Counted from the first letter of the stretch, positions 1,029 through 52,282 are shown. The stretch: 64,000 nucleotides of DNA from Neoechinorhynchus agilis (GCA_051530055.1 CM121342.1:9563480-9627479); one strand, 5' to 3'. The notes: generated by a model not told the origin, from the sequence alone. Made by a program: numbers and translations.

Positions 1029-1978
1029 ATGGGCCACTATTTTAGACAAAACTTATATAAGTTACCTGGATCGCATTTGTCGCAAAGCACATCGCGTTTT
1101 AACGGTCAAGCTAGACTGTAACATTATATCGCTTCTAAAACCTCTGATCAGAATCAATGGAATTGATAACAGTTTTAATATCGCTAAGTCCGTTTTAATT
1201 CCTAAAAACTGTCGACTTTATTTAAGTTTGTTTAGCGTACTTTAAGTGCCGATGTATACCACTGTATACCCCCGAGTATTTTGAATCTAGCGAAAACGGT
1301 AACAATGTATCCGGGTATTCATACCTCGAAGAAGAATTTCATACCAAAGAAATGGATATTAAAAGGGGCGAGATGAGTGATGGTTACGAATTTAAAACTA
1401 ATTTCAATTTAATCGGAGATCACTCGTTGTTGCATCAACAAACTTCACTTGGAGACTCCCAAAAAAATATATTCAATACATTACCAGTGCAATATTCTAA
1501 ACGGATTATTCCCGAGCGAGTTCTTGAAGATCAAACTAGTATTGCAAACCCAAAAAATATTCGTCAACCATTCGAAAGCTCTGTTCGGAAGGATCAGGAA
1601 CCATCTTTTGAAAGATTTGCTCGTATATTGAGAAACGTGAATTGCGTACCCGCAAAAGCAGAGTTCATTCATCAAAACAGTGACAAAATCGTTCAGATTT
1701 TTTCTAACAGTAGTGACATTGATGAATTTAATGAAGGGGATTTAATGATGATCGAATTGGACTCAGCCAAGATGGATCTAATTAATGATGTTTGTAAAAG
1801 CTATAAAAATCAAAGTAGGATCAACAAAAGATCATTCAGAAAAACCTTTTTGACGGAATGGTCGTACAAGATACAACTTATCGAAACTTCCCTATACTAT
1901 CGAACAATGTTGTTGATGATGTTTTGTGTAACTGTCCTTTTTGTAATTGTCTATATTCTGGGCCTAATGATGGCATAA
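1029..1978 (+). CDS. Orphan protein with C-terminal transmembrane helix; predicted exons 1029-1039 and 1240-1978 (249 aa)
   Basis: ORF 1352-1978 stays open upstream to about 1240. Removing the TA-bounded hairpin 1040-1239 joins it in frame to aaaaATGGGC at 1029 (MGHY|FKCRC...). Hydrophobic C-terminus MLLMMFCVTVLFVIVYILGLMMA. Further upstream exons are possible. Confidence 0.5.
1040..1239 (+). other. TA-bounded hairpin intervening sequence (200 nt)
   Basis: TA(1038-39)-ttt-tagacaaaacttatataa ... ttatttaagtttgttta-gcg-TA(1238-39); about 16 bp stem; removal is in frame. Confidence 0.6.
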
Positions 1979-2589
1979 AAATCGTTGACCAGTAGCCTGC
2001 GAGTTAGATGTATGAACAAACACTAAATTTAGAGAAACATCAGCAATCTAATTGAAATTAAAAAAATTTTAACAACTTAATTTTTTGTCCAACTGATGAA
2101 AATTGCGGTTTTAACTAAACTGATAATGAAATTTCTATTTCAACTAAAATGCTGGACATATTCAAAATAAATTGCAACGCTAAAATAGGAGATGCATGTA
2201 ATTTTTGTTCTATTTCTACATTGCAGCATAACAATCAAAATGAAAGCATTCACCTTAACACTATAGCATTTTATATTGATAAATATGATAAAAACGGTTT
2301 ATTAAAGCATCGATAGAAAGTCCTTCGGGATAATAAAATTACACTTTCGGTGAGAATAATCCCGGTCATTACATATTTTATTTATTCGAAATATTTCGCG
2401 AGGTATCCTCGCCTCTTCAGTCATCTAAAAATAGGTTTTCCATATTACGATTTTTGCTCGAGTGCATGGGATAGGGACCAATTACCCGATCGTGTTTCGT
2501 TTTTTGTTTTTCCATTGATTTTTTATATTGATTTTTATCACGTCGCTGGCTGGAAGTTTCAAGCTAAAATTAGCTTTATTTCCCTCCAT

Positions 2590-3073: not shown

Positions 3074-3720
3074 TTTTAGCTCCTGGACTATCCTCTCCCT
3101 TTCTATACTTCACGCCAATCGAGTGGATGAGATAAGAGAGGCTCTTCGGAAGTATGAAGAGACCGCCGAGATTTTATGCCTTATCGGTTGGTGGCTTGAC
3201 CAGTGTGGTGGTCCCCATGGTAGGTTCGCCTTAGAACGCTTGACAAGGACGTCCAGGAACGAGACCTCACCGTCGATGCCCTCTTACGCCTTTTGCGAGG
3301 GATAGACTGATAAAAAAGGTAGAATGGCAGTGAATGTATTGTTTGCGATTGTGAAGATAAGATTCGAGCCAGCGGATCTGCCACAAGTGGAAACCAAAAT
3401 CGGAGCAGGCCCGGAGAAGGAGTGAATTGTCCACGGAGTCGAATGCTTTCGATAAATCAAGTTGAATGAGACGGGTGACGAGCAAAGGATTATTGTCGAG
3501 GTTACGTAGGAGCGTGTCATAAATGCAAAGTAGGGCCTCGATTGCAGAAAAACTGGGTCGGACGCCGTGAAAGAAGGTGAGATTAAAAACATTTTTCTAT
3601 GATTTTTGAAAGAGCGGATAGAATAGAAATTGGACGAAATGATTAGGTGGAAATAGTATGTCTGTTTTTGGAATAAGGATAAGTTTAGCAGTTTTCAGGC
3701 ATGAGAAGTTTTCAGGCGTT
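3074..3720 (-). mobile_element. L2/CR1-like LINE RT fragment
   Basis: LDLSKAFDSVD RT motif; near-identical to the 23740-24020 copy and similar to 59300-59700. Confidence 0.8.
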
Positions 3721-5205: not shown

Positions 5206-5303
5206 AGAAAACGCGGAAATTCCATTCATTCGTAACGATCTTAAAATTGGATTTAACTTCTTTTTATGATATTTGTTTCACGTTTTTCTCTGCATTTTAG
5301 AAG

Positions 5304-6484
5304 ATGAGACTTAAAGCTCGATTCAAAGATGTCTATCAGATGCAGCGAGTTCTTGCACTGATTTTAAAAACCAGCAAGCATGGTATAATCCGATTTTCAA
5401 ACACCAAAGTCAGTCTCATGGCACGAGAGCATTTATGCTGTTCGAGCAGTTGCAGTCGAATTTGGTGTGAGATCGATCGAGACTGCATTTTCGATCAATA
5501 CTCATTAGATGGCAACCTCTGTGGCCCAAGTGATCTTCAATCAAATTGCAGTTGTGATATCGTAATTGAAGTGAATCTCGAAGATTTTCTCAAAGCGCTT
5601 AGATCAGGTAATCAAAATAGTTCGGTTTGCTACTTAAAATTGACAAAAAGAGAGAACATTTGCCTAAGCGTTCAATTGACTGTTCCGCTTGACTGCGATA
5701 CGCGAATGAGAGTTACTGAAAATGCCAGCACGGATGATATTCCTCATACTCAACTAACTCATAACATCGCAGTAAAGCTCATTGACCGACGATTTTGGGA
5801 TCAATTAGGCGAGCCACAAGTTCTAAGGTACGATGCGAGTGTAAGCCTTAATCCGCAACTTAAAAGAACACTCAGAAATCTAACGTTGATGCTTCATTCG
5901 AACATACAGCAAAGTTGTTTCAAAAGGTTATTAAAAAATAAATTTGCAAAATCATCATAATTTTTAGGCCCCATAAATTGGTAAGTAAGATTTGGGTTTA
6001 GATTCGCGTTATGTACTCCTTTATTCGAGATAAATTGGATCCTTTAAAGAATTCTACCAAAAACGAAATAATGATCAAATAAAATTCAAATGGCGTTTTT
6101 TGAATTCTTACTAGATCAAATGAAGTGTCACCAGTACTCGATAGACTAAAATTGATTTCTCCGACGGTTAAAATCGGTCTTCATGGCTCATCGCTTTTGA
6201 TCTCTGTAAAAACCGATTCAGTCAGTATCGAAGGAGCTCTTAAAAATGTCCAAGTGCTAGAAAGAGTTGCAAATGCAACATTAGATACCTCCGAAGTATT
6301 CGATAATTTGAGCTGCCCAAGTCCACGCTGCAGTGTGAACGTCGACTGTAAAGAAATTGCCAACTTTTTGCAAGCGTCAGGTAACATGGGAGGAAATCTG
6401 ATCTGCAATATAAGGACTGGAGAGCAAATCAGTTTATTTTTGATTAGCCACCACCTGAAAATTCAGTTTACGATTCCGTGTTAG
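5304..6484 (+). CDS. HUS1: Checkpoint clamp subunit HUS1; exons 5304-5882 and 6137-6484
   Basis: MRLKARF..., IWCEI...IFDQY, LKLTK...CLSV, THNIAVKLI...W..L.EP, then LRNL|LDRLKLIS after splicing, and C-terminal IQFTIP. Confidence 0.85.
5883..6136 (+). other. TA-bounded hairpin intervening sequence (254 nt)
   Basis: TA-acgt-tgatgcttcatt ... aatgaagtgtca-ccag-TA; removal is in frame. Confidence 0.7.
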
Positions 6485-16240: not shown

Positions 16241-16349
16241 CCCGATGATGTATTTTGGATCAAAATAGCGCACACGAAATCACACTTAATTGTTCAAGAG
16301 ATTGCACCTATTTTATTGCTGAGCAGGAAAATGACCGACTTCGTCTTCT

Positions 16350-25543: not shown

Positions 25544-27550
25544 ATGCATACAATTGCGGTATCCTTTCCAAAAGGCACACTACGTCCAATCGTATTAACA
25601 GCGATTATCATAACAGGTCTAAATTACGTTTTCTTCAATTTTAAATACCTGAAGGCGTTATGTTTTCGATTCGTTATTCGGAATGCACCGTTGGTACATG
25701 GAAAAATTCAAACAGTTAGGAAGGAATACAAGCAAAGTTTCCTTAAAAATAATAAAAACGCAAATAAAGACGTCCGAATATTTCGATCCCTTCCCGAAGA
25801 ACCAATCAAGGAAAGTGAATTAATGGACTTAATGCATGCAAATTCCAATTTGACTTCTATTGAAATTCACACTGGCTCTTTATCTGGGATTGTCTATAGA
25901 GATAGCGAATATCTTGACCGAGTTGCTTTGAACACTATCAAACTATTTACAGACTCTAATCCCCTCCATGCCGATGTATTTGTTGGAACAAGAAAGATTG
26001 AAGCCGAAATTGTTCGAATGGTGGCTGGAATGTTCAATGGAGACGATCAAGTGATCGGTTCAGTGACTTCTGGAGGTAGCGAATCACTTATTCTGGCCGT
26101 CAAAACATATCGTGATCGCTTCGTAAAAGAAAATAAAAGATCTGGGAGATGTGAGCTCGTACTTCCATCAACGGCACATCCAGCTATTCTAAAAGGATGC
26201 CACTACTTTGGTATTGATCCAGTTTGTATAGAAGTGGATCCAGCGAACAAGAAAGTTCGAGCGGTCGATATTGTATCCGCTATAAGTCCTAAAACCTGCG
26301 CCATTTTCTTATCCGCCCCGTCTTATCCACATGGAGTACCAACGTACGATGCTTTCTTCAATGAGGAGCTTGATAAGAGCGTCTTTTAGCACTCGATCAA
26401 AACCATTATAGACTTTTAAATCAATTGCATTGTCGTTCAATTATCCAGCGCTAATGAGGTTCAATAAACTAGGAGTAAAAACGTTAGGCAGCTATTTGTA
26501 AAATTATGAAATTTCCATTTTCACCTAACAAAGCAATTTATAATTTCAGTTTCATCCTTTTTTGGAAGGGGAAAAAGTAGTTCCAAAGGATTTAGCATTA
26601 AATATTTTGACGCTTTAGTCTATTTTTTTAGATTTTAGTAAACTAAATTGTTTCGACTTTATGTACTTTTGTGTCATTTTTTAGTTCCAAACTAATAAAT
26701 CCCATCGTATTTTTTTGCTTTCGCATAAAATCAAATGTCAAACAATTTTTTGTTTCAAAAAGCATCCTATGTAATAATGGACCCGATCGCAGAAATCTCT
26801 AAATGCTGCAAAGGAATTCCTATCCACGTTGATGCATGCCTTGGTAGTTTTATCGTTCCTTTCCTAAGCCACCTCGATCCTTTTGATTTCAGAATTTCCG
26901 GAGTTACCAGCATTTCTTGTGATACACATAAATACGGTTTATGTCCGAAAGGCTCATCAGTACTGATTTACCGAAATTCGGACTACTTTGCCCATCAGAT
27001 TTTTGCGTGGGCCAAGTGGCCCGGTGGAGTGTATGGTACTCCGACAATAGCCGGTAGTCGTCCTGGCATGATATCATGTGCTGCGTATGCTACAATGCTA
27101 GCAGTCGGTGAACGAGGATACAGAGAACAAGCTCAAGGAATCTATAAAGCTTGTCAAAAAGTATCCGAAGGCATAAAATCAATCGAAGGTTTGAGTATGA
27201 TCACTGAACCACAAGTGAATGTAGTGTCGGCAACATGTAACCACGTCTATGAACTCATTGATCTAATGAAAAAATCCGGATGGATATTGTCCCCACTACA
27301 GGATCCGCCTGGATTTCATATCGCCATTACCCAGAACCATCTCCGTGACGAGTGCATTGAGCGTTTAATATTCGATCTCAAGTCTTCGATGGATATTTTA
27401 AGACAGAGAAAAGACTTCACGGATAAATCCGAATTGACAGTTCTGTATGGAAGTGGTCAAATGCTTCGAGATACAGACTTAATTGAAGATTTATTGGTTG
27501 ATTATTTTGTTTCCCTTTACACAATCCCACCGTCCATTGAACATAAATGA
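25544..27550 (+). CDS. SGPL1: Sphingosine-1-phosphate lyase; exons 25544-26338 and 26777-27550
   Basis: SNPLHADVF, GSVTSGGSESL, SAPSYPHGV|MDPI, IHVDACLG, PLP lysine motif SCDTHKYG, GGVYGTPTIAGSRPG. Confidence 0.93.
26339..26776 (+). other. TA-bounded hairpin intervening sequence (438 nt)
   Basis: TA-cca-acgtacgatgcttt ... aaagcatcctatgt-aa-TA; removal gives PHGVMDP. Confidence 0.8.
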
Positions 27551-27552: not shown

Positions 27553-28557
27553 TTAGTTTTCACTGTTCAAAAACAAACCTTTTATTCGTTCTCTTTGTCG
27601 TTTGTTCGCCATCTTTATTTCACGAATGACAATATCATAGAGGCGTTCAACTGCACCATTAAGATTAGAAGTCGATTCACGAGCGCAAATTAGATCCTTT
27701 CGAGCTTCCAAATAATCCCTCCGACCTATTGCATTCACTAGGGCTCGTCTATATAGACTTTTGTGTCGTAGCAAAAGTCCTGTGTCTCCTAAAGTCTCAC
27801 AAAATTCGATTACGCGGGTACAATTCCGTTCAATCCTTTTCAACATGACTTTAGCATCGTCCACATTGACACACAAATTATCGTCAATATCTAGTTTAAT
27901 TCTTCGAATTTGACAAGCGACAATATTTGAGAGCGCCCGTGCTTTAATGATCCGCATTTCAATCTCGTCTCCGGTTAATTTTCGACAAATTTCCGCTAAA
28001 CGAATTGAACGCCTGTACGTGTAACGATGGGATTGCTTTAACGTTCATCACACAAAAAAGGAATTAAAATCCCATCGTAGCACCATTTACGAGTACACTG
28101 CAGTCAGCATTGCGTAATCGTCGCTTCTCTGATCACTATTCAACGTTTTAGAGCGCATTTCGTATACGGAATTTCCGTGTTCAATAAAACTCAAAGGCGC
28201 TGATTTAAGCCAATCGATAGGTGGCGTAAACCTTTGCGTTGAAGGTCGGACAACCGTACACTCAATAAGTTCGATAGAAAACACAACTTCGTGGTTTTTG
28301 AGTTCACACAATTCACCTTCGATTAGGGACAATGTGACAAGATGAACGATGGCATGAGTGAGCAATGTGTCCGAGTCGAAAACAAAACGGTCCTTCCACT
28401 GACCAAGAAATGGTATTTCCAATTTAATTAATCCATTTATTCTTAATTTGCATTGACAGCCTTCTTGAGCCAAATGTCCGTTTCCTTTTCTAACAACTTT
28501 TTTTATCCATTGATCGCCTGCGAAATTAAATGCTTTTTCGGCCTTGTCTGAACTCAT
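27553..28557 (-). CDS. FKBP-like/TPR co-chaperone; one intron of about 72-78 nt near 28013-28090
   Basis: KKVVRKGNG and FSIELI degenerate FKBP fold; TPR motifs GNSVY, ALSNIVACQ, KSLYRRALV...DYLEARKDL. Confidence 0.6.
28016..28087 (-). other. Hairpin intron with two in-frame solutions (TA-TA 28016-28087 or GT-AG 28013-28090)
   Basis: Perfect 11 bp arms acgatgggatt/aatcccatcgt (28024-34 and 28068-78). Confidence 0.6.
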
Positions 28558-28630: not shown

Positions 28631-29450
28631 CTAGTCATCATGAACCCGTAACCATTTCATGATTCGGTCTTTCCATTCACTTTCAACAATACTGTCAGCG
28701 ACAAACAAAACAGCCCTACACCCTTCCATAGCAGCGTCCGTGAGTCGTTTAAAATCATTTCCATGAACTGACCGTCCATACTTTGATCCGACTTCTAGCC
28801 AAACGACAAGACCGATTTTTGAACATATACACACGGTGACTGTAGGACCGTTTACACTTTCCTCTTGAGCGTCTACATCAGAAAATCTCACTAGCTCATG
28901 AAATGTTCTGCTTTACGTCCACAAGGTACTTTCCCCTTAACAAAGAAGCCGTACAACAAGTGAGAATATCTTTCATCGGAATAGCGGTGCTCATTGTAGC
29001 GAATGAAACAGCGTTCATCACGGTTGCAAGAACGCTACCATCGATGGTCTCAATGTCCACATAGACATCGAACACAGATCGAGAACTCTGATCCCAGATT
29101 ATTGTTGATTCCAAAGCTTGCTTTACTAAGGATGCAATTGTGGACAGCTCGATTGGCAGTCCTCTAAGAGCCTCTCTATTTCCGTTCACTTGACAATTTA
29201 CACTCAGTTGACCAGTAATAGAATGACGTGAAGGACATTGATGTCTTAAATCGGTAGCATCGACCTCATGGGGTCCGTAAACTCCGCAAACAACCGAAGT
29301 TCCTCCTTGTCGTAACCAAATTGATCCAGTTGCGGTTTTACACATATCGAAACGGTGTTCAATACGGCGAAGTTCGTAAGGACGGCGACCGTCTCCACGT
29401 ATTGAATGGTCCTCAAGAAGGTCAAGAATAGTGCCAATGTTTGACGTCAT
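28631..29450 (-). CDS. EXOSC4: Exosome component RRP41; exons 29450-28914 and 28873-28631
   Basis: DGRRPYELR, GGTSVVCGVYGPHEV, DGSVLATVMNA, PMKD, then LVDV|DAQEE. Confidence 0.85.
28874..28913 (-). other. TA-bounded hairpin intervening sequence (40 nt)
   Basis: TA-aag-cagaacatttca-tgagctag-tgagattttctg-atg-TA. Confidence 0.75.
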
Positions 29451-31325: not shown

Positions 31326-32682
31326 ATGAGCAGTCGAATTTTTGTTGGTAATCTACCATTGGGTACTCGTCCGGACGATTTGGAGGCATTGTTCTCTCGA
31401 TACGGGCAACTGATGCGTTGTGATTTACGAGAAGGAATACGTGGCGGATACGCATTTATTGACTACAGTGGGCGAAGGTTTGACTGAGTAGTTAACGTTC
31501 GTTCAGATTGATTATGGCAGGGAAGCTGAGGAAGCGGTCTACGGTCTAGAAGGTTACGACTTTGGCGGTCTACGACTAAAGGTTGAATTCTACGACGCTG
31601 ATAACCGAAAAAGGCGTCCTGGTATGATAAATGACGAGGGTGGTCGTCGTTTTGGTGGACCTCGGAGATTTGATCCTTATGAGACGGCCGACGGTGGTAG
31701 GTACGGTGCTACTAGAGCGGAAAAGCGGATATGCAGAGGAGAATTCCGAGTTATTGTTACAAGTACGTTTTTGTGGGACGTACAACGTCTTGTCAATGTA
31801 TTTATATAGACGTTCCATATTCGGCTAGTTGGCAGGACTTGAAAGATCATATGCGTGAGGCTGGAGATATTGTTTTTGCTGATGTGAATCGAGACGGTAC
31901 TGGATCGGTTGAGTACTCCAACTATGAATCAATGCAAGCAGCGCTGAAACGTTTGGACGAGTCTAAAATGAGATCTAGACAGGTACTTGGGTATTTTCGA
32001 ATAAGGAACGTTTAATGGTAGATTAAAAATTGTTTGTTGAAGGAAAAGCTGAATTAGAATCTCAGAGAAGTTTAAATTAATTGCCCCTCTATTTTAGAAA
32101 TACTTTAAATCCACTCATTTTCTTATGCGCTAATTTTAAGAATCGAGTTCTGATTTTGAAAGTTGTTAAAAATACGAATCATAATCCATCGATTTGATGA
32201 TTTCAAATTATGTGAATTCAGTTGACCGCATCTAGAAGAAGATGTTTGTAATTTCCTTATTTCTTGCATATTTGGTAGAACATCCTGTTCATTATCGATA
32301 TTTCACGGCATTTTTGTTTCACAAGTTTCCTGATTTCTTCTAAGTTGTTTTTCCTAGAGCTGACGGTAATGTTAGAAATATATGCGTAATAGATAAGTAT
32401 GGAATAGAAACCAAAATAAAATCACTCATAAAAACTGAATTTCACGAATAGGGTGATGTTTCGTACATTAGAGTCAAACCGAACCGTTCGTTAATGCCCA
32501 GACGTTTTCTGGGCAGTGGAGATGGATTTCGAAATCGAAGAAGCGATAATTCAATGAATATGGAAAGACGAGATCGGCGTTTGATGTCAAGAAGTCCAGC
32601 TCGTCCATACACTAGCGGACGTAGATACGGAATGGACGCCCAAACTCCAAGACGGATGGGCGGTGATTACGGCTTTACTTGA
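31326..32682 (+). CDS. SRSF1: SRSF1/9-like splicing factor; canonical introns 31478-31520, 31763-31809, 31983-32451
   Basis: RIFVGNLP, YAFIDY..RREAEEAVYG..GYDFGG.RLKVEF, and the pseudo-RRM motif SWQDLKDHMREAGD; GDVSYIRVK. Confidence 0.85.
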
Positions 32683-32816: not shown

Positions 32817-35800
32817 GTGTGTGTTTTTTCGTCAAAGTTTAAGACAATGCTACCATCGGTAGATAAAACGAGTCATTCGATGAAATCATCAAAGGAACGT
32901 CTTAAACCAATCAAACTTCCTGATTGGTGGTCAAAGCCAGAACTGACCCTAGATTATTATCCGAGTGCTGAAAAATACGACGGAAACGTGCGCGACATTT
33001 GCAATTTCCCCGTGGACGAACAAGAGTCTCTGATAGTCCACGATCTTATCCTATGTATGAGTGGAGTTGAAGGTCGTTATATAAAGACACCGACGCTTGT
33101 TGATGGCCGAACACGATCAAGATCTTTCCATATAACACAGACACAAAGATGATTAAAGTCCGGGTAATGGACACTTGTTGAGATCGTCTTTGTCTCAGTT
33201 TAGACCGTGGACTGAGTGCGAGTCTACGTGAGTTGGCTAAGCGCGTCCTTGAACTCTGTTGCGATTACTCTTTTGTTGTAAGATTCCAGCAGTCGTTCGG
33301 AGGAGATGAGCAAGGAGGACAAGTCCTTCACTCGTTTTGTGACGCCCTAAACGACGTCCTTAAGGACTACCACATTTTTATTGGAAAGGTTTGCTCGCTT
33401 AAACCACTGCCCTCACTACAGGCTCTATGGTGTTTGTGTCAGCCGATGCGGTCAAACATGGCCACATTGGCGAGTCTTGTGGAAATCGGTTGGCATTCTC
33501 ACACGGGTTCTCCAAAGTCGGCTGAAATTTTGAATCAAATGCGTTCACTTCTGGACAGAACCGTTGATCCGTGCGAACAGAAACTTATTGAATGTGTATT
33601 GAATAAGGCAGCCAAGCCCTATGTAGACAAAATATTACCAAGGTTTTTGAGCAGTGGAATCGTATTTGATGATCCGTACAATGAGTTTGAACTCGACGAT
33701 GAAAGTGATAAATTGCCGTATTTTCTTGAACCTTTTACCATTTACTGTGCACACGCGCGCCAAAGAAAGGGTTGACGGTTCTTAAATTCCTATAGTTTTT
33801 GAGGGTTTCATTTTGCATTTTGATTGTAAATCCATGTCTAAAAATACAGTACAATGTCGCTTTTTTTCGGATAACCGAAAACTCAATGTGATTACAGAAT
33901 ACGATGGGAAGTGGGTTTAAAGGCCATTTTTAGCTTTATTCGTGAAAATAATCGCTTATCTGATCTCTTTTTACCATTGGACGCTTTTGTGTGTGCTTTT
34001 TCGCTGCGAGGTCACTTGACTAGGAAAGCAATCTGGGCCAAAATTGTCGTTCCTTTGTATTTAACTTTAAGAAACAATCCCCCCCCAAAAGAAACAAGCT
34101 CTAAGTTCGTTTTCTTTGACTGCATCGGGTTAAATATTTCGTTTTTTGTTTCGAAAATTAAATATTTACGTCGAAATCTCTCAAAACATTAGAGATTAAA
34201 TATTTTTTGGATTCGAATCTGAATTTCTATGTTTGCAAAACATACACCAGCCCTTTTATTTGCAATGTTTTGGCCAAAATGCGATATTTCGGCACACTCG
34301 TCTGCTGCTCTAATCAAGGTTGTTTGTAAGTTTTTACAACAAAATCCTGATCTAAATCATTTTAAGTTATAACATTGCCAGTTCAATGTTCAAAAACGTT
34401 TCATTTTGACGACTGGTCGTTGCCACAAACGTATCAAAGAAAAATCTTTTTTCGTGCGTATTTTTCAGTGAACGATTACGAGAGCTGTGTGCACAGTAGA
34501 CGAAGACAGATGATGATCGACACTGGCCGTTACTTGAGTATTCTAAGTAAAATTGGGCCAAACTCCGTTGTTATAAACGTACCTTCAAGAGGATCAGAAT
34601 CGATCCAAACTGAATCGCTTGAGGCTACGACAGAGCATAAAATCCGAAGCAGTTACGAGCAAGCAAGTCGAGCGCTGTTCGATTTAGCAGTTGGCCCCCT
34701 CTCGATCTTCGGACGTCTGAATTCCATTCTAAACTACTTTTTACTCCGCAAAGCTGACTTTCTAGTTCATTTTCTCGACACAGCGGAACAAGAACTCCGC
34801 GCGAGTTCCAGTACAGCACCGTTAAATCGCCTGGATGCACTTCTCGATCTCTCTATCCGAACGAGTTGCCTAGCAAACGATCAACACAGTGAACCAGTTC
34901 ATTCATGCTTTCTCGATTGCGATCTCATGAGTTACATTACGAGTGTTGGGAACCAAGAATTGCTCAAACCTTCATCGGTCAATACGTCTTCTTCGTCGTC
35001 ATCCATACCTGCATTTGAACTATTAACTCTGGATCGTGAAATGCCGTGGCCACTCACAGTGCCAGCCGATACGAAGAAATCGCTTCAACGTCTCTTCCAT
35101 CATATCTTCTATCTTAAATTCATTGAACGAGCACTTTGTAACGTCGGGCGAGGCTACATGCAATACCACAGGAAACATTGGGCTTACAAAAGCACGTCGT
35201 TCGACATCGCCACGGTGTTCGCTCTCCGTCAACGGATGCTTCATTTCGTTCAAAACCTTCTGTACTTTACGTGCATCGACGTTATTGAACCGAATTGGGC
35301 GACTTTTATTGGGTCAATGCAACACCTAAGAGATAATCGGTCGGAATCTTGCAATGTAGCAAACATTGATCTTATCTCATTCGGATTCAGTGAGTTCGTC
35401 GAGAGCTGTATGGAAGATGGCCTTCTAAGTAAGTCAAGCACCGATATATTTATGCTCATCTACAAGACCTTAGCGCGCAATCGGCGATTGGTTCCCATTT
35501 TGTGGTGGTGGTAAAGTTTTTTGTGTAATTGAGAACGCCTAAAAAACACGAACCAATCACCGTCGTCTATCAATCTGTAAACTATTTGCCCTTCAAAGTG
35601 ACGTTCTTCTAAAGATCAGGGCGGTTCGTTCTGGAGCTTCGTCTCGAGCTCCGTCTCCAATGTCTCGCTCGCCGAGTGGTTTTTCGGTTTATTCGCCTTC
35701 AATGAGTTCCCTGAACAGCTCTGACACTCTACTCACCGCACAGTCAAAACAACGATACGGGGTTATTTTCGTCAGTAAATTCTCAAAAGCTATGCGTATC

Positions 35801-36106: not shown

Positions 36107-38040
36107 CTAATGGCGGGCTCGCCGGAATTGAGTATAAGTCAGCATCCCACTTCGAGCAAGTGCCATACCGTTCATTATCCTTCGATTGGCCTCGCGTGCC
36201 CTTGCGAAAGTCCCACGCGGCAACCGTCTCGAATTAAGAATCGGGGAATGTTGTTGCGCAATGTTAACCAAGGCGGCCAATACTTGGTTTTGTTGGGCAG
36301 CGACGATTGTCGCCGGCACGGGCAAATGCTGTCGCTGCATTCGATGTAGGTTCGGTATTGGAAATTGCTGTCTTATTTGAGAGAGATTTATCGAACCAGG
36401 ATTCGGTAGTCGTATCGGTGAACTGGGTGCGATCGGCGGTCGTCCAATCACGTTCAAAGATACTTCCGACGTGGAGTATGAATTGTCAATGTCGCTGTAG
36501 CACCGAAGAGGCCTGTTTCGTGTGAAATCGTCCGTTGAACTCTCAGGATCGTCCACGCGGTCTATTTCAACGGGTATATGCGCCTTAAAAATCGAGGTAC
36601 ACCTAATGGAAAAACATCACTATTCTTCTCTTACTTTGAAACAACGATTAATCTATTTAGATATTCAAGAGGGAATTCTGTACAAAAAAGTAACACCTTT
36701 TGTGGTTTTGATAGCGAACCTTGAAAACTTTTATGAAAACGTCATGATTTTAAAGCAGTTTTTGCGACAACGACACGTCCATAGTTAAAAAAAACATTAA
36801 TTTTTAAAATCTATTAGTAAGAAGAGAAGATAATTTTTGGAATGACGACTAAGTCTAAAAAATCGTTGGATCGCAAGTCAGGGGAATTCCTTTTTTTTAT
36901 GAAAACCAGCGCGTATAACCGTTGATATAAGTCGACAGGTTTGCTGGCCACCGCAGTGATTTTTTTTGGAACAGAAGGTAGAATGACCTTGCGTTGTTTA
37001 TCAATGATTTGTTCTAGATATTGAAATCGTTTTCGCATTCTAATCGACTCGATAACATCGTCGGGTATAGCTGCGTTATTAATTTCTTTGTCCGGTTTAG
37101 CTGGTACTTCTGGTACAGGCAAAATCAATGTAGGCATAACGTTCGCGTTTTTTGTCTTTTGTTTTTGCCTAGCCTTCGTCTTTCGTGATACAGGTTTCGG
37201 TTCAACGGTCTGTAAAAGATTTTCCGCGAGGGACTGTACAATCGTCGTTGAAGGGCACGTGTACTTGAAGAACGCTAAGGGGACAATGGACGCCGGTCTT
37301 TCCAGCGGATAACAATCGTCATCAAATCCGTATACATATACAAGCCAAGAACCTTTCGGCTGTACATTTTCGGATATGTCACTCATGTCCGAGACATGGT
37401 GGTCGTAGACGGGTTGAGGTTCCATTGGAAGACGAGATTCGTTCAGTGGCTGCATCTGGGTTCGTCGACCGCTTCGTAGCGCGATGCGACATAGTAAAAT
37501 ACGAATAAAGTCTGATGGCTCCTTTTGTGCCCAATGATGCTCAATCACGTGCTCGACCGAGGAGAACAAATGGACGCCATGTTCAGGTTTGCCCAAGACA
37601 TGAGAAAACGTCGAGCAGTCAATGTCCGAACACGCAAGTCCTTTTTTGGATATTGTTTCCAATGACGATGCCTTATGAATCAAAGCAAATGCTGTACGTA
37701 CAAAGGGTTTTGCACCTTTATCTTGGTCTTCTGACAAATCATTTCTATGTTTCCAATAACGAGCTATTAGCTCCCCATTTTCGATTCCTTTCGCCTCCGT
37801 GATTTGGTCTTCGGCGAACGTGAGTTTACTGGTCGAATTACTGGCTTTTCGCACTTGTACAAGCAAATCGACGAATTCCTTTTCGGTTCTACGAATCGGA
37901 TACAAATTCCCATTTGTTGAGCGGTGTTTTCGAGGTATTTTGTAATTCATAAGAACCTCATTCAAAGTACTCTTTTCTTGTTCTTCGTCTTCCACAATTG
38001 CCGAAGATTGCTTTTTGTTCGTTTTGGAACGAGTCTGCAT
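36107..38040 (-). CDS. TASOR/FAM208-like protein with pseudo-PARP (DUF3715) domain; exons 38040-36928 and 36562-36107
   Basis: ISKKGL...LGKPEHGVHL, MEPQPVYDHHVS and LVYVYGFDD...RPASIVPLA resemble TASOR motifs (LGSPSMGVYL, LDPTPKHECHVS, YYFYEYGFD...RPRHVCPYA) as I recall them. Confidence 0.7.
36563..36927 (-). other. TA-bounded hairpin intervening sequence (365 nt)
   Basis: TA-tat-caacggttatacgcgc ... gcgcatatacccgttg-aaa-TA; removal is in frame. Confidence 0.75.
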
Positions 38041-46470: not shown

Positions 46471-46790
46471 TCATATTTGCTTTAAACCGAAAAGAGAAGA
46501 TGTAAAACTGGCTCACATGATTGTTCTATTGGCTGAAATACATTGACTGACCCGAATAAAAATGAAAGGTAATATTGTTCCGACCATAATCTTCTTGGGC
46601 GATTTCAATGCAGTTTCGGATTCAACATTATGGCGGTTTATAGCTGGCGGAAAGATCGATCTTGGAAACGTAAAAAGGGACACATGAGACCGTTTGGACT
46701 TTATTCTTGAAATGGTCCGTTGAGTGATTACTATGTCACTGTCGACCACGTATTCTATTCGAATGGGGACGACGTCGCTTTGGATCCAGT
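46469..46790 (+). pseudogene. Angel/CCR4-family EEP domain fragment with in-frame stops
   Basis: HICFKPKREDVKLAHMIVLLAEIH*...PTIIFLGDFNAVSDSTLWRFIAGG and VTVDHVFYS; 5' end abuts the CRE fragment. Confidence 0.6.
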
Positions 46791-47277
46791 TTCAAAATTA
46801 AAGATCTTTATCCTCATCGTGCTGGTCCAAATGGACAGAAGACGCATTTCTAAAGTGAGTGGTAAATTGTGCCCTGGAGTGTCTATAAAGCGAGCGATAC
46901 GAGATGTGAAATCCAGTGGAAGGACGAATTCTAAAAAGAGGAAAAAGGTGAATGAGCGTTGGTTGGGTTCGTTAAGTTCGTTATTAGACCCCTTTAAAGT
47001 GTGATTTTCATCTATTAGTCCATGCGACTACAAAAAACACGATCAATAAACAGTACGAGTTCTGAGATTTTTTCGATCTCAAGCGTTCTTTTCAAAGTTG
47101 AGATCGGGAAGTGGAGGAGAACAAAGCGTGCTATTCACAACAAAAAGAGGTGAAACTATTTCGACTTTAATTTTTCGTCCATGATTTGCTGAATTCGTAA
47201 CTTTTTCGAAACGGAACACTTGAATTCGTGATGTTTTAAAGCCGTTTCACATTTTAGATAGGTCGTCCATGTTTTCA

Positions 47278-50200
47278 TTAAATTCCCAAAGGTCCATACG
47301 CCTTATGACAAGCGATCATTCGATCGGTAAACGAAGGACCATAAACGAATCCCGGAGAAGTTCTCGCGCTGAACATTTCTCGTGACTCCTCTATGATACA
47401 AGACGACAAACGATGCACTGCTTCAGTGTACCGGCGATTGAAATCTTGGATAGTATTGTGGCTTTCTTTAAAACCTTCAAGGCTAATTTGAATCGATAAT
47501 ATTTGTTTGTATACCGTGAGTGCATAAGTGGAGGCAGCTCTGATTCTTCGGAACGAACAAGCACAATGTCTTCGACGAGACTGGAGAAGATCGAGAGCCA
47601 GTGTGATGTCTCGGTTCAAGGCAGCTGAAGCTATTCGGCGAGCATATCGCAAACAATCGCAAGTAATCAAAGCGTCAACGAGTGTGGATTTGTTGAGGAC
47701 GGAATAAAGTACACAGAATGGACGTTCGATGCAGAAGTGATGGTTCGCCGAATGCATCCATTTGGTCTGAACGAACAATGAGCTGAGCGAAGTGAACACA
47801 TGGGATTTGAGCGCAAGGCGACTGAAATGCCACAAGATGTTCCAATAGACCGACGGGTGCCGAAATCGAAGACCGCTAACGCCAAGATTTTGCTCAATTA
47901 CATACTCGATTTCTTTGCGAAGCGCCATCGGGCTCAAATATTCTAATAGACGAGACTACGAAGCTTGAAAAGGCATACGAGAATCAGTGGGGAGAATTGC
48001 CGATTATTGCTCGAATAGAGGAAGGTAAGAAGCATCAATATTCTTAAAAGAATTGTTATTTTAGAGTTTTATACTTGCTTTTAACGCAACTTGTATTGAT
48101 AAATGCTAGTAGATTTTGATTTATATGAAATAAATAATATTTTGAAATGGGAGGGCTGATTTTGAGCCCGGAAATCGTGAATAGGTTACAAAAGCGATCC
48201 GTACCTTTATGCGCATAGTCTCGTCTAACATACAACCGCGGATTCAATCCATTTTTGAGATTTCTCGTTAATTCTCGTGTACACAGAAAGTGAAGGGACA
48301 ATCAATGCCGAACAGTAAACGCACCGGACTCTAAGTTCTGAATCATTAAGCGCCCACGCAGCCGTGATTTCCTCATCGAAAAGATAACAAGAACATACTG
48401 AACACTTTGAGCAACTGGTAATGGCAACGCATGGATCCGTCTTTCGTGAACTGGTTTTCCATTTGAAATTCAGACACTTTGAGTTGTCAATCTTCTTCTT
48501 GCGCTCAAGCTCATGTCGATGAGATGCAAATGGGATAAAATCCCTTTCGTCTAATATTTTCTTCTTCTTTTCTTGCTCGTTTGATTCTACCAAAAGAGGA
48601 TGAGATTTAACCGGATGCAATCTTTGTCCATAAAGCTCTTCTTTCCTTACATTTACTAGCTCTTGATTCGAGTCAACGACTTTGGTATCCGTTATGTAGC
48701 TAAGAAACCCACGTTCGATGGACAAAGGCTTGAAAGTGCTCATCAAAATACCGGCTTGGCACCGATAAGCAACCAAAAGGATATGACGGTATCCGTCACC
48801 GAATAGATCCAATCTGCTTTTATCATCTACAGAGCTACTAGTAGATTCGTAATTGTCAGAATTCAAGAACCGATCAAAGCTCGGAAAGTTTGTCGTTGGA
48901 AGCTTTAGATTCATTATAGTTTTAAGAAATGAATAACCTTGTCGTGGTTCGTGTCTCGCCTTTACAGACTTATTCAAGTACGAAATCGCATTTAGTACGT
49001 GCCTTAGTTTCCGCCATCGATTAATCGGCCGATCAGAATTCCATCTCAATAAAACTTGATTGTAAGCGGCAGTTGTTACGACGTCTACTGGATAGTTAAA
49101 CATTCTAAGTGTATTCATGAGTCGAACAGCGAGAGAAGCTCTTTGGTATACGTTACACATTTGCATTAAAATGCGAGGACATATCGGATCCGGTTGCTTG
49201 TTTGGGAAGCTGTGGTGATAATCCACTAGAAGACAAATTCCATATTCCATCGGATCGAATTCAGGATCGGTACACGTACAAAAATGATTCCGACTAAATG
49301 TTAAAAGCATTTAAAAATTTCGACGAAAATGATGTCGGAACTTTTATTTTGTTCCTTTTTTTCTTGAAAATAAAATCTCGAAAAATTTGTGATCACTTTT
49401 GATTAAGAATCGGAACCGTTTTAAGATTTCTATTGAAAACTTCATTAGCATATGCAGGTAAAAGCATAAACCAGATAGCCAGCGAATGATTGATCATCAC
49501 AGCACTACATTGGGCATCATCGTTGAACGTCTCATCACTTGCTTGTTCATCTTTCTCCGGTTTATTTCTCAACAATTTTAAAATCCGAAATTGCCGATAC
49601 AATGAATCAGTATCGTTGTTGTCCTCTATTTCCGTTGAATCAAGTCCTTCCTCGTTTTGCAGACTTTGAACCAGTCGTTCAATATAATCCATGTCGAGCA
49701 CAAACTTTCCCACCGTTAGAGCATCGTCTTTCGTTTCATAACTAGGAGGTAGAACAACAATGGTGTTTTTCGTTAGATCATGAATTGATTTCACAGATGA
49801 TCTACTTAAGGACAATTGCGAATTGGATTCTCGGGAAATGCAGTCATCATCATCATCATCATCGAAGTCGATAGTCTGCAATTCTTGTTTTGAACCACAA
49901 ATTTTATGCATAAACTGTTCGAATTTCACATGTCGCACATGATCAGGAGAAAGAACTCGTTGTTCAAAATATCTGTTAACTCAACCAATCTTAGAGAAAA
50001 ACGCTCAACTCGAAGACTGGTCGACTGAAATGACTGGGTTTGAACCAATAAATCAAAAAACTTACGAGAGTCCGGACGAGTCCGGACAAATCCTTCAGTG
50101 TCGAACAGAGAATTATCTTTTTCCGACGTTGTATGGCAGAATGATTGATACCCGCTCAATATACGTGCCATAAACGTCATAAGACCTTCGGATATCACTT

Positions 50201-52282
50201 CATTATCAACCTCGGGGCTCGACAGTTGCCGGGCAAGTAATTGCTTTAAAACTTTGTGTGGTTTTCTAGGTAAAAGTTTGAGGTTTATGTTATCCCTTTT
50301 GTCGGGCCACTTTATACTACCCGTGTCTATTGCAAGAATTCCTTTATTCAAAGAAACTGGATCTAAATGATATTCGCGAGACGTAAAAAAGGTCTTGAAT
50401 AACAGAACAAAATTTCTCAAACAAGAAAACGAACTATTCTCAATTTCTGTGTCTATAAATCTAAATTTTAACGATAGTTTTTTTTCACTCGTTTGTAGGT
50501 TAATCAAGCTAAGAAAAAAATGCTAGGTGATTTCATTAAAATATTTAGGCGAAACAAGGGCTATGTGCAACTCTGGGATCCTTGCATTTTAAATCGATAG
50601 CGACAACATCGTCCGGCGGAGTGTGATGGTCATAAAAGCAAGTATTTATCCCAAGGATGAACGGGAATGGAGCTTCTAATATTCCAGCGAGTCCTAAAGG
50701 GCATGTTGGAACATAAGCGCATTGCCATTGCAATGGATAAATCAGCTCATAGATAGATTCACATGCGGGTGTTAGCGATACAGTCTTCAATGCATGAACG
50801 ATGATTTTAACTTCGAGTAAAACGGCCAGAAGAGTGAGCAAGAAGCCTTCAACTCCGAGACATTTAAGAAGGGATCCAAAAGACGACATAGACTGCCTCG
50901 CGCTAAGGACGTTTGCTTGGATCGGTGGATCGTATTGAATGCTGATACGTGTAGGAATCGATTCAATCAATGGAATTTCATTCAGAAAATGAACTATAAG
51001 ACGTTCTATAGGTGGCGATTTGGTTAAACCATTAACCGATTTGTCATGGATGAGCGTAAGGATTCGTCGAAATGGTTCCGATAATGGAAACGCCGATAGG
51101 ATACAAATGGCTTTTGTCGAAAAATACGCCCAGTCATTTATGCGGTTTCCGGAAGTGAGAGCGTCGACGACTGGAACAGGAAGCGAATCAGCTTCGTCAC
51201 TTGATAGTTTTTCATAGAAACAAAGAGTGAACCCGTAGAGTTTGTTGAGATAATCCGTCTTTAATACGAATGAGAAGAACGTACGCAGGGTGCCAATGTT
51301 TGTTCTACCGATCTTCTGTTAATGTTTTCAAGAATTAAAGTGGCGTCATAAATTCTCAATTAAAATCTAGAATTAACCCATTTTCCTATGAGTAGGTGGG
51401 CCTCGACGTTTCATTTTATTTTTTGCCAAAAAATCTAAAAAAGATTCAGTGTCAATAGAGGGAAGCACAGAAAAAAGCGCTACCATTCGCTTCAAATTTC
51501 TGCCCTTTGAACCAGTATTGATCGTGGATACCTCGCATTTTGAATAAGAAGATCACTAGGCATAAATCCCGTTTATTAATTTCGACAGCCGCATTTTGTG
51601 GAAAGCAGAACGATGCCACTTTTTCGGGAATGGCACAATCGTTGGCGGATAAACTGCTTTTTAGTCCGTGTAAGAGTAAAGGGGCGCATTGGACCCTGGA
51701 GTAGGATATAAATGCTTTTTTGTAACAAATGAAAAGATCAGATCCTCCAAGAAGACTTCTATTTAAAGCTTTGTTTACGAGATTATAAGTATGTGGGACA
51801 TGGTCACCTTTTAAAATTATTAAGACATCCCGGACGGCTGGTAGGTTATTCTGACCGTTTGAAAAGCTCGCTCGTCTATACGTAAGGAATATTCGCGTTG
51901 ATCCAGGTTGAGCAGCATTAACATTGGCACAATGACCATCGACGGTTTCTCGGATTACACTTACATCGTCTAAAGGAACGTCTTTGTGTTCATAAAGAAC
52001 ACCTACGTCACATAAAGGAGGTTTCTCGAATCCTCGTTTAAAGCAAAGGAACATTTGTCTTGGACGTAAACCAGAAGAGTGAGTAAGACTCGCGCATGCA
52101 CCGGAAACCGTCTCCGTTATGATCTCGTATCCAGGCGGGCATTTCTCATTCTCAATCAAATTCACTAAAGCAATATCGGTAATAGGTTTTGGTGATTGAG
52201 TCGGGATAAACACGTCAGAAACAGTCAATCGAGGAGATACTCCAACCACGACAAATGAATCAATCATTGGATTCGATTCCAT
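47278..52282 (-). CDS. DENND4: DENND4/Crag-like Rab GEF (MABP, uDENN, DENN, dDENN); five hairpin-ended introns
   Basis: PITDIALV..CPPGYEII MABP domain, KVASFCFP, LYGFTLCFYE, YPLQWQCAYVPTCP, EAPFPFILGI, VAIDL|DTG, FMARILSGYQSF, RILMQMC, YLSPMALRKE, HPSVYWNILWHFSRLAL. Confidence 0.88.
47944..48230 (-). other. TA-bounded hairpin intervening sequence (287 nt)
   Basis: TA-tgt-tagacgagacta ... tagtctcgtcta-t-TA; perfect 12 bp arms; removal gives AVV|EYLSP. Confidence 0.85.
49277..49421 (-). other. TA-bounded hairpin intervening sequence (145 nt); a GT-AG alternative exists
   Basis: TA-aaacggttccgatt ... agtcggaatcattt-ttg-TA; removal is in frame. Confidence 0.55.
49973..50027 (-). other. Hairpin intron without TA/TA; GT-AG 49973-50025 or non-canonical 49978-50027
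   Basis: 12 bp stem tcgaccagtctt/aagattggttga with two G-U pairs. Confidence 0.55.
50328..50589 (-). other. TA-bounded hairpin intervening sequence (262 nt)
   Basis: TA-aaa-tgcaaggatcc ... ggaattcttgca-a-TA; removal gives IDL|DTG. Confidence 0.8.
51304..51556 (-). other. Hairpin-ended intron, exact junction unresolved
   Basis: TA-g-tgatcttct ... agaagatcg-g-TA, but TA/TA removal (251 nt) is out of frame; in-frame options are 253 nt (non-canonical) or 241 nt (GT-AG, 51316-51556). Confidence 0.45.

What the first reader, a model, noticed from the sequence alone, without database searches (positions are those of the whole stretch)
1038..51558. A second, structure-defined intron class: TA-NNN-[hairpin]-N(1-3)-TA inserts in conserved genes
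Seen: 14 ORF interruptions in 8 genes (orphan, HUS1, SGPL1, FKBP-like, EXOSC4, TUBGCP2 x3, TASOR-like, DENND4 x5; 40-767 nt) end in 8-16 bp inverted repeats. Twelve have an in-frame TA...TA direct repeat just outside the stem. Removing the insert plus one TA restores family motifs (PHGV|MDP, SFHI|DRGL, IDL|DTG, VV|EYLSP, LVDV|DAQEE, LRNL|LDRLK, YKTL|SIC). For 10 of them I found no in-frame GT-AG solution that keeps the conserved residues. Arm sequences differ at every site, so pairing rather than sequence appears conserved, and I saw no shared transposon body. Known analogues: euglenid nonconventional introns (end-pairing), Fritillaria non-canonical introns, Introner transposons, TA-bounded Paramecium IESs and Tc1/mariner TA target duplication. 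Inference: a distinct splicing or excision system in an animal-like genome. I do not know a description of this exact architecture in animals, but I cannot search the literature.
Basis: partly seen in the sequence, partly recalled or inferred. Interest (0 to 1): 0.96.

Follow-up and report, generated by a model that had tools for sequence, protein, structure and literature searches.

The report
Hairpin-defined non-GT-AG introns, spliced in RNA
Conserved genes of this worm (probably the thorny-headed worm Neoechinorhynchus agilis) are interrupted by inserts that lack normal intron signals but have self-pairing ends; public RNA data show five of them cut out of the RNA exactly while staying in the DNA, so the animal has a second, structure-guided kind of intron.

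Summary
I laid three RNA runs and one raw-read DNA run on the DENND4-like gene. The RNA contigs skip five inserts of 50-287 nt. None has GT-AG ends. Joining the exons gives one open 1,337-codon frame. About 15x of DNA reads show no skip, so removal is from RNA, not DNA.

Each insert has a terminal stem starting about 3 nt inside each junction. End-pairing is in the top 0.07-2.7% of random intervals (combined p = 4e-8). In-frame GT-AG alternatives at three sites are not used.

Seven more sites (HUS1, SGPL1, EXOSC4, FKBP-like, TUBGCP2 x2, TASOR-like) share the anatomy. Homology or Pfam co-linearity backs five of them. TUBGCP2 intron 2 and the orphan site are uncertain.

TA...TA is frequent but not required: the five proven sites have repeats TA, TA, TT, A and T. 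Canonical GT-AG introns without stems sit in the neighbouring SR-protein gene.

The closest known systems are SOS splicing of transposons (Nature 2025) and euglenid nonconventional introns. The enzymes were not tested.

This scan had already flagged the same class in other windows of this genome, without transcript evidence in the notes I saw. I found no paper reporting it for this phylum.

The parts
51301..51562 (-). DENND4-like hairpin intron 1 (262 nt), proven by RNA. It reads exon ...GATTTA | TGC-stem...stem-AACA | AAC. The direct repeat is A.
   Evidence: the joint 51300>51563 appears in 3 RNA runs, including a 1,436-nt contig spanning it, and in 0 DNA reads; 12-pair terminal stem, end energy -16.4, p = 0.005.
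50328..50589 (-). DENND4-like hairpin intron 2 (262 nt), proven by RNA. It is TA-bounded and joins ...VVAIDL|DTGSIK.
   Evidence: the joint 50327>50590 appears in 3 RNA runs with a 2-nt ambiguity (TA), and in 0 DNA reads; stem offsets 3/3, p = 0.013.
49978..50027 (-). DENND4-like hairpin intron 3 (50 nt, nearly all hairpin), proven by RNA. The direct repeat is TT, not TA.
   Evidence: the joint 49977>50028 lies in 829-nt contigs of X8 and X9. The main X7 contig retains the insert. MFE -19.3; p = 0.0007.
49278..49425 (-). DENND4-like hairpin intron 4 (148 nt), proven by RNA. The direct repeat is T. The TA...TA model (49421) is wrong by 3 nt.
   Evidence: the joint 49277>49426 appears in 3 RNA runs and in 0 DNA reads; stem offsets 3/3; p = 0.027.
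47944..48230 (-). DENND4-like hairpin intron 5 (287 nt), proven by RNA. It is TA-bounded with a 16-pair stem. The in-frame GTATGT...GTAG alternative is not used.
   Evidence: the joint 47943>48231 has depth 40-70 in 3 RNA runs and appears in 0 DNA reads; the GT-AG alternative is 48233..47956; p = 0.0013.
5883..6136 (+). HUS1 candidate hairpin intron (254 nt), TA-bounded. It joins LRNL|LDRLK.
   Evidence: the Pfam Hus1 profile runs 1-159 in the upstream ORF and 158-285 in the downstream ORF; the PDB alignment ends at ...LRNL; end energy -15.3, p = 0.006. No RNA test.
26339..26776 (+). SGPL1 candidate hairpin intron (438 nt), TA-bounded. It joins PHGV|MDP.
   Evidence: the upstream ORF aligns to human SGPL1 up to residue 237, and the downstream ORF from 236. 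The join is co-linear without a gap; p = 0.005. No in-frame GT-AG lies within 36 nt of the junctions.
28016..28087 (-). FKBP-like/TPR gene candidate hairpin intron (72 nt), TA-bounded.
   Evidence: 11-bp perfect core stem, end energy -22.1, p = 0.002. An in-frame GT-AG alternative (GTGTAC...TACAG) exists and is not excluded. The gene identity is weak.
28874..28913 (-). EXOSC4/RRP41 candidate hairpin intron (40 nt, nearly all hairpin). It joins LVDV|DAQEE.
   Evidence: both ORFs align to human RRP41 around D172-L173, and the join is co-linear (LVDVDAQEE against LADLSHVEE). The adjacent GTAAAG...GTAG pair is out of frame by 1 nt; p = 0.02.
33135..33202 (+). GCP2-type (TUBGCP2) candidate hairpin intron 1 (68 nt), TA-bounded. 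It joins SFHI|DRGL.
   Evidence: there is no GT before the in-frame stop; a homologue HSP ends exactly at 33134, and the join is co-linear within 2 residues; p = 0.004.
33738..34498 (+). GCP2-type interruption 2 (about 760 nt). An 11-bp stem spans about 740 nt. The exact junction is uncertain.
   Evidence: three in-frame solutions fit. They are TA...TA at 33738..34498, the stem-offset rule at 33742..34499, and GT-AG at 33718..34484. Homologue alignments restart at 34495-34513.
35473..35569 (+). GCP2-type candidate hairpin intron 3 (97 nt), TA-bounded. It joins YKTL|SIC.
   Evidence: sequence; a homologue HSP ends exactly at 35472; the GCP_C profile continues in the next ORF; end energy -19.6.
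36563..36927 (-). TASOR-like (DUF3715) candidate hairpin intron (365 nt), TA-bounded.
   Evidence: 12-bp stem plus extension, end energy -22.3, p = 0.0007. No homology check across the junction.
1040..1239 (+). Orphan-gene site. Removing it would put an ATG in frame with ORF 1226-1975. This is a weak member.
   Evidence: end energy -9.5, p = 0.12, and the stem offsets are larger. No homology. Not verifiable.
31763..31809 (+). Contrast: a canonical 47-nt GT-AG intron (GTACGT...TATAG) in the neighbouring SR-protein gene, with no terminal stem.
   Evidence: the join gives RVIVTNVPYSASWQDLKD. End energy is -5.1, the same as the random mean. No RNA test.
31983..32451 (+). Contrast: a canonical GT-AG intron (GTACTT...AATAG) in the same SR-protein gene, with no terminal stem.
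   Evidence: the join gives ...SRQ|GDVSYIRVK. End energy is about -3 (measured on 31991-32451). No RNA test.

Best explanation
These are true intervening sequences. They are present in the DNA of every copy sampled, transcribed with the gene, and then cut out of the RNA at junctions with no GT-AG or other sequence consensus.

Each is defined by a stem between its two ends. The stem starts about 3 nt inside the 5' junction and ends about 3 nt before the 3' junction, which brings the two cut sites side by side. A 1-2 nt direct repeat (often TA) spans the junctions.

The most likely route is structure-guided and outside the spliceosome: recognition of the paired inverted repeat, two cuts at the base of the stem, and exon ligation. 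This is how SOS splicing (AKAP17A-CAAP1-RTCB) removes inverted-repeat transposons from C. elegans and human mRNAs. Here it would work precisely and constitutively on fixed inserts, probably derived from transposons.

Shown:
- removal from RNA at five sites;
- retention in DNA;
- non-canonical ends;
- enrichment of the terminal stem;
- restoration of the reading frame;
- GT-AG introns without stems in a neighbouring gene (called from sequence and homology, not tested with RNA).

Inferred:
- independence from the spliceosome;
- the enzymes involved;
- a transposon origin;
- membership of the nine sites not tested with RNA.
For: -: five non-GT-AG joints appear in three RNA runs, at depths equal to or above the unspliced form. 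About 15x of raw DNA reads show none.
- the RNA-defined exons give one 1,337-codon ORF.
- every RNA-defined intron has a terminal stem of 11-16 pairs with offsets of 3/3 (once 3/4). Combined p = 3.9e-8 against random intervals. These junctions were set by RNA, not chosen for their stems.
- in-frame GT-AG alternatives with good donors (GTATGT, GTAAGT) lie at or near three of the sites and are not used.
- the 40-nt and 50-nt members are almost entirely hairpin, leaving little room for a branch site and pyrimidine tract.
- canonical introns in the neighbouring gene lack stems.
[quoted passage not shown] Its sites lie in or near the repeat ends and are rarely GU-AG. The element stays in the DNA.
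- G-U pairs outnumber A-C mismatches in the stems, 17 to 6. The count favours G-U by the way stems are called.
Against: - No enzyme or end chemistry was tested, and a modified spliceosome is not excluded.
- SOS splicing as described is imprecise, with many junctions and indels. Here each site shows one junction. Contigs hide rare variants, so this is not settled.
- The inserts form no repeat family in the window and carry no transposase or known transposon ends. A transposon origin is therefore only suggested, by the inverted repeats and the frequent TA.
- Only one gene was tested with RNA.
- The evidence is assembled contigs, not raw RNA reads.
- The species name rests on earlier scan notes and matching metadata.
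Confidence: 0.6

Rival explanations
1. The ordinary (U2-type) spliceosome removes these introns with relaxed splice-site recognition, as in the tunicate Fritillaria borealis. The terminal stem would be a relic of transposon inverted repeats, or a helper that brings the sites together.
For: - A working GT-AG system is present in the same window, on sequence and homology grounds.
- Fritillaria shows that an animal spliceosome can process mostly non-GT-AG introns derived from transposons.
- All five proven junctions fall between codons, as many spliceosomal introns do.
Against: - The intron ends share no dinucleotide or longer consensus: TG..CA, AA..TA, CA..TT, CT..GT and TG..TA. Fritillaria introns do, with AG-AC and AG-AT.
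- Good GT-AG pairs a few nt away are ignored.
- The 40-50 nt members are almost fully base-paired.
- The cut sites keep a fixed distance from the stem rather than from any sequence.
Confidence: 0.3
2. The joints are not biological. One possibility is that reverse transcriptase jumped across the hairpins at short direct repeats. Another is that the RNA comes from insert-free alleles or paralogues.
For: - Template switching is known to produce non-canonical 'introns' flanked by direct repeats across stable structure (general knowledge).
- The evidence here is contigs from one study.
- The RNA and DNA samples come from different individuals.
Against: - The same junctions are required independently by the protein. 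Removing all five gives one 1,337-codon ORF with the uDENN, DENN and dDENN motifs intact, while the unspliced form has stops and frameshifts.
- The repeats are only 1-2 nt.
- The spliced form equals or exceeds the unspliced form in three libraries.
- Neither DNA source gives any sign of insert-free copies. The 2026 raw reads show no skip, and the 2025 assembly-source contigs hold 99% of the stretch's sampled words, inserts included.
- The exon sequence is identical in spliced and unspliced contigs.
Confidence: 0.04
3. The inserts are cut out of somatic DNA (IES-like, TA-bounded), and the RNA only reflects the rearranged genes.
Against: - None of 575 laid DNA reads (about 15x) skips any of the five inserts, while most RNA does.
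- Unspliced RNA is present at every site, as expected for a precursor.
Confidence: 0.02

Closest known systems
SOS splicing of DNA transposons from C. elegans and human mRNAs (Zhao et al., Nature 2025, PMC12779559)
   Same: It occurs in animals. The insert sits in an exon and has base-pairing terminal inverted repeats. It is removed from RNA while staying in the DNA. The junctions lie at or near the ends of the repeat and are not GU-AG. TA is the target-site duplication of the Tc1/mariner elements that it acts on.
   Different: SOS splicing is described as an imprecise rescue of recent transposon insertions, with many junctions and few products in frame. Here each site shows one exact junction. 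The inserts are short, unrelated to each other and to known transposons, and fixed in conserved motifs of housekeeping genes. Dependence on AKAP17A, CAAP1 or RTCB is untested.
Nonconventional introns of euglenids (PMC6221363, PMC11282704, PMC12501133)
   Same: The borders are variable and non-canonical. A stem brings the two ends together and starts at intron position +4. Short direct repeats make the junction ambiguous. They coexist with conventional introns and are removed slowly or late. Lengths range from tens to hundreds of nt.
   Different: The euglenid stem has a CAG/CTG consensus at +4..+6 and -8..-6, which puts 5 nt at the 3' side. Here there is no consensus and about 3 nt at the 3' side. 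Euglenids are protists, whereas this is a protostome animal. Circular excision products are known in Euglena and untested here.
Non-canonical introns and introner elements of Amoebophrya (PMC7789003)
   Same: The ends are not GT-AG. There are 8-20 nt inverted repeats at the intron ends and short direct repeats over the junctions. The splice position varies relative to the hairpin. Most cannot be assigned to transposon families.
   Different: Amoebophrya is a dinoflagellate parasite. Its direct repeats are 3-5 nt, against 1-2 nt here. Part of its introns form repeated families, and none do in this window.
Non-canonical introns of Fritillaria borealis (Henriet et al. 2019, as summarised in PMC11282704 and PMC13326754)
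   Same: It is an animal. It has many species-specific non-GT-AG introns with features of inverted terminal repeats and target-site duplications.
   Different: Fritillaria introns have preferred ends (AG-AC, AG-AT) and are attributed to a modified U2 spliceosome. There is no such consensus here.

Membership tests
SOS-splicing substrate (PMC12779559) | Exonic insert whose two ends are inverted repeats able to base-pair | tested here: met
   11-16 pairs at all five RNA-proven sites. Combined p = 3.9e-8.
SOS-splicing substrate (PMC12779559) | Removed from RNA while present in DNA | tested here: met
   joints appear in three RNA runs and in none of about 15x raw DNA reads.
SOS-splicing substrate (PMC12779559) | Junctions in or near the repeat ends, rarely GU-AG | tested here: met
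   junctions lie 3-4 nt outside the stem. Ends are TG..CA, AA..TA, CA..TT, CT..GT and TG..TA.
SOS-splicing substrate (PMC12779559) | Requires AKAP17A, CAAP1 and RTCB, and is independent of the spliceosome | not testable with these tools
An earlier unchecked scan note reports an RtcB gene about 1 Mb away.
SOS-splicing substrate (PMC12779559) | Imprecise: several junctions per insert, with indels | tested here: inconclusive
   one junction per site, the same in every run that shows it (three runs at four sites, two at the 50-nt site). Contigs drop rare variants.
SOS-splicing substrate (PMC12779559) | The insert is a recognisable DNA transposon | tested here: not met
   no insert resembles another or any other part of the window. 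None carries an ORF of a transposase. The whole genome was not searched.
Euglenid nonconventional intron | Non-canonical, variable borders with short direct repeats | tested here: met
   1-2 nt of ambiguity at all five junctions.
Euglenid nonconventional intron | Pairing of +4..+6 with -8..-6, usually CAG/CTG | tested here: not met
   the 5' offset of 3 nt fits. The 3' offset is 3-4 nt rather than 5, and there is no CAG/CTG consensus.
Euglenid nonconventional intron | Excised as a full-length circular RNA | not testable with these tools
   One search lists no back-joints, but contigs would not show them.
Fritillaria-type spliceosomal non-canonical intron | Preferred AG-AC or AG-AT ends | tested here: not met
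   none of the five has these ends in any allowed register.
Introner / MITE-derived canonical intron | GT-AG (or GC-AG) sites supplied by the element and its target duplication, in a multi-copy family | tested here: not met
U12-type AT-AC intron | ATATCC 5' site and TCCTTAAC branch site | tested here: not met
   only intron 1 can be read AT..AC, and its 5' end is ATGCCTAG.
Ciliate-type IES / DNA excision | Precise removal from DNA | tested here: not met
   no DNA reads carry the joints.
Bulge-helix-bulge (tRNA-endonuclease) intron | An outer helix formed with exon sequence around two 3-nt bulges | tested here: inconclusive
   exon-flank pairing is not above controls (mean -3.1 against -2.2, p = 0.09). 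Intron-to-exon 2 pairing was checked by eye at one site only.

The most novel reading that the evidence does not exclude
An animal has turned the spliceosome-independent, RTCB-type 'SOS' repair splicing into a precise, constitutive second intron-removal system. It would act on many fixed hairpin introns in essential genes, here on all five introns of one 4-kb coding sequence. If so, mRNA splicing without a spliceosome works at genome scale in a metazoan, and the cut sites are measured from the base of an RNA stem.
Probability: 0.4. Interest if true: 0.95.

Novelty: new variant of a known kind. Interest (0 to 1): 0.86.

Why it matters
1. Hairpin-defined introns without GT-AG ends were thought to be confined to euglenozoans and a few other protists. 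In animals only larvacean tunicates were known to break the GT-AG rule on a large scale, and they keep a sequence consensus. An acanthocephalan with introns of this kind, confirmed by RNA, would be an independent origin within animals.

2. The authors of SOS splicing ask what its natural targets are, and whether it can protect genes over evolutionary time. Fixed, precisely removed inverted-repeat inserts in conserved motifs would answer both. They would also supply dozens of natural substrates for finding the unknown nuclease and its measuring rule.

3. There is a practical consequence. Gene finders that assume GT-AG break these genes. The public model of the GCP2-type gene here is a 360-residue fragment. 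The published genome scores 47% complete metazoan BUSCOs against 55% for the transcriptome. Part of the reported 'gene loss' in this parasite lineage may therefore be an annotation artefact.

Tried and rejected
- Rfam and tRNA scans of the window found nothing.
- I searched the protein collection for products of spliced transcripts, to read junctions at protein level. Only the window's own 184-residue EXOSC4 fragment came back.
- All-against-all and insert-against-window blastn found no shared family.
- A bare motif scan for TA-N(2-4)-stem...stem-N(0-3)-TA is only 1.6-3.5x enriched over dinucleotide shuffles, and most hits are not at ORF breaks. I rejected it as a detector.
- Exon-exon flank pairing, which would suggest a bulge-helix-bulge motif, is not significant.
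- The G-U against A-C count in the stems (17 to 6) is suggestive, but the way stems are called biases it. I give it little weight.
- Other large palindromes in the window (39130-39264, 40340-40434, 43333-43516, 56271-56499) lack TA or other flanking duplications and have no tie to the introns.
- PDB alignment of the second HUS1 ORF gave no significant match.
Full report
**What the window is.** It is a compact, gene-dense animal sequence of 36-47% GC. It has no Rfam or tRNA hits.

Pfam and PDB searches identify the genes. They are HUS1, a protein kinase, a WD-repeat gene, SGPL1, EXOSC4/RRP41, an SR-protein gene, a GCP2-type gamma-tubulin complex gene, a DUF3715/TASOR-like gene, a DENND4-like gene (MABP, DENN and dDENN domains) and RPS19. 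Retroelement remnants lie between them.

The window lies on CM121342.1, a 16.4-Mb chromosome of assembly GCA_051530055.1. Earlier notes of this scan name the species as Neoechinorhynchus agilis. The set of public runs fits the N. agilis papers: mRNA-Seq, small RNA and genomic DNA from 2025, and Hi-C and WGS from 2026. So does a genome made of three large scaffolds. I did not see the organism name directly.

**The decisive test.** I laid three RNA runs (Logan contigs) and one raw-read WGS run on 47200-52400, the whole DENND4-like gene on the minus strand. The RNA contigs carry five joints:

| Intron | Skipped | Length | Junction ambiguity |
|---|---|---|---|
| 1 | 51301-51562 | 262 nt | 1 nt |
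| 2 | 50328-50589 | 262 nt | 2 nt |
| 3 | 49978-50027 | 50 nt | 2 nt |
| 4 | 49278-49425 | 148 nt | 1 nt |
| 5 | 47944-48230 | 287 nt | 2 nt |

- Four joints appear in all three RNA runs. The 50-nt one appears in two runs and is retained in the main contig of the third.
- The DNA run contributed 575 reads, about 15x, and shows no joint at any of the five places.
- Unspliced contigs also exist, at lower or similar word depth. At intron 5 the depths are 8.7 unspliced against 44 spliced, and at intron 2 they are 8.2 against 13.
- Removal is therefore from RNA, is incomplete, and is not a DNA rearrangement.
- Joining the RNA-defined exons gives one open frame of 1,337 codons with a single terminal stop.

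**Anatomy of the five proven introns**.
- On the gene strand their ends read TG..CA, AA..TA, CA..TT, CT..GT and TG..TA. No allowed register gives GT-AG or GC-AG.
- Only intron 1 can be read AT..AC, and it lacks the U12 5' motif.
- Each has a terminal stem of 11-16 pairs, including 1-2 G-U pairs.
- I placed each cut as far 3' as the RNA allows. The stem then starts after 3 unpaired nt and ends 3 unpaired nt before the junction (4 nt in intron 1). In that register all five cuts fall between codons.
- The junction repeats are A, TA, TT, T and TA.
- End-pairing energy (first against last 22 nt) is -13.7 to -24.5 kcal/mol. Random intervals of equal length from the window give -5.7 +/- 3. The per-site p values are 0.0007-0.027, and Fisher's combined p is 3.9e-8.
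- These junctions were set by RNA, not chosen for their stems, so the test is unbiased.

**Canonical sites are ignored.** Three of the five sites have in-frame GT-AG alternatives nearby:
- GTATGT...GTAG at 48233..47956;
- GTAAGT...AAG at 50065..49884;
- GTGATC...TAG at 49396..49294.

None appears as a joint. The neighbouring SR-protein gene has two ordinary GT-AG introns, at 31763-31809 and 31983-32451. They restore RRM motifs and have no end pairing, with energies of -5.1 and about -3.

**The other nine sites of the finding.** No RNA test was possible.
- HUS1 (5883-6136), SGPL1 (26339-26776) and EXOSC4 (28874-28913) have the same anatomy. Their predicted joins are co-linear with Pfam profiles or human proteins, without gaps.
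- At EXOSC4 the adjacent GTAAAG...GTAG pair is out of frame by one base.
- GCP2 introns 1 and 3 (33135-33202, 35473-35569) are supported by homologue alignments that end exactly at the predicted donors.
- The TASOR-like site (36563-36927) and the FKBP-like site (28016-28087) have strong stems but no homology check. The FKBP-like site also has an in-frame GT-AG alternative.
- GCP2 intron 2 has a clear 11-bp stem spanning about 740 nt, but three in-frame junction solutions, one of them GT-AG.
- The orphan site is weak.
- The eight candidate stems give a combined p of 1.6e-12. These sites were picked with stems in mind.

- TA...TA is common: two of the five proven sites and most of the candidates. 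It is not required.
- Used as a rule, it misplaces DENND4 introns 1 and 4 by 3-4 nt. The distance from the stem predicts better.
- The bare motif is frequent by chance.

**Mechanism.** Shown: removal from RNA at non-consensus sites that flank a terminal stem at a near-constant distance.

Inferred: the stem is the recognition element, and a structure-measuring activity makes the cuts. The best precedent in animals is SOS splicing (PMC12779559). There, paired inverted repeats in an exon are necessary and sufficient. The sites lie in or near the repeat ends and are rarely GU-AG. The element stays in the DNA, RTCB ligates, and the nuclease is unknown.

The lead to that paper came from an earlier scan note. 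I then read the paper myself.

The differences from SOS splicing are precision, constitutive use, and the lack of any recognisable transposon.

Euglenid nonconventional introns share the geometry of three free nucleotides and then a stem, the direct repeats, and late or partial removal. They have a CAG/CTG consensus that is absent here. Amoebophrya introners share the layout of inverted repeat plus direct repeat. A relaxed spliceosome, as in Fritillaria, remains a real rival. I give it about 0.3.

An artefact from reverse transcriptase or from insert-free alleles is unlikely. The protein requires the same junctions independently, the repeats are only 1-2 nt, and neither DNA source shows insert-free copies.

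**Novelty.** Full-text searches pairing acanthocephalans or rotifers with non-canonical introns or splicing found nothing relevant. The N. agilis genome and transcriptome paper does not contain the word 'intron'.

This scan has flagged the same class repeatedly in other windows of this genome. The follow-up notes I saw say transcripts had not been checked.

**Limits.**
- One gene was tested with RNA.
- The evidence is contigs rather than raw RNA reads, so rare junction variants, editing and circles are invisible.
- Word depths are rough.
- The phase-0 regularity is unexplained and rests on few sites.

Noticed in passing
window 47944-51562 and the other candidate sites: I placed each cut as far 3' as the RNA joints allow. 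In that register all five proven introns, and six of seven other well-supported sites, lie exactly between codons. Exon 2 often starts GAC, GAA or AAC. I have no explanation.
   Followed up: partly
window 49978-50027: The main contig of RNA run X7 retains the 50-nt DENND4 intron, while X8 and X9 have it spliced. Its removal may differ between samples, for example by sex or stage.
   Followed up: no
window 16611-16637 (-): The WD-repeat gene has a 27-nt AT-rich candidate mini-intron (ATT-TAATAA...TTATTA-TAG) with a 4-nt direct repeat, ATTT. Removing it keeps the frame (..FPK|ICAAGS). The stem is very weak (-0.6 kcal/mol).
   Followed up: partly
window 31458-31506 (+): The first interruption of the SR-protein gene is 49 nt, flanked by the direct repeat ATTGA(c/t)TA. 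I found no in-frame GT-AG. The join gives GYAF|IDYGREAEEA. End pairing is moderate (p = 0.04), and the stem is not at the 3' end.
   Followed up: partly
window 34510-35430 (P0002): The public protein for the GCP2-type gene has 360 residues. It starts inside ORF 34366-35511 and leaves it 13 codons before hairpin intron 3. The deposited gene model looks broken by these introns.
   Followed up: partly
window 29939-31183 (+), also 12300-13160 and 14100-14600: These are tandemly repeated units with open frames that repeat the same peptide, lying between EXOSC4 and the SR-protein gene. Two further intergenic arrays are also present.
   Followed up: no
window 3270-3600, 23700-24700, 41800-43450, 46030-46480, 53200-55900, 58660-62110: There are several reverse-transcriptase and retroelement ORF remnants on both strands. 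Some occur as near-identical copies, for example 3287-3694 and 23612-24073.
   Followed up: no
window 39130-39264, 40340-40434, 43333-43516, 56271-56499: These are large palindromes with arms of 31-74 nt, outside the conserved genes. They have no flanking TA or other target duplication.
   Followed up: partly
window 48352, 49099, 51046: The 2026 DNA run differs from the assembly at three places (G>A, A>G, A>G). The RNA contigs carry the assembly's letter. This is ordinary polymorphism between individuals.
   Followed up: no
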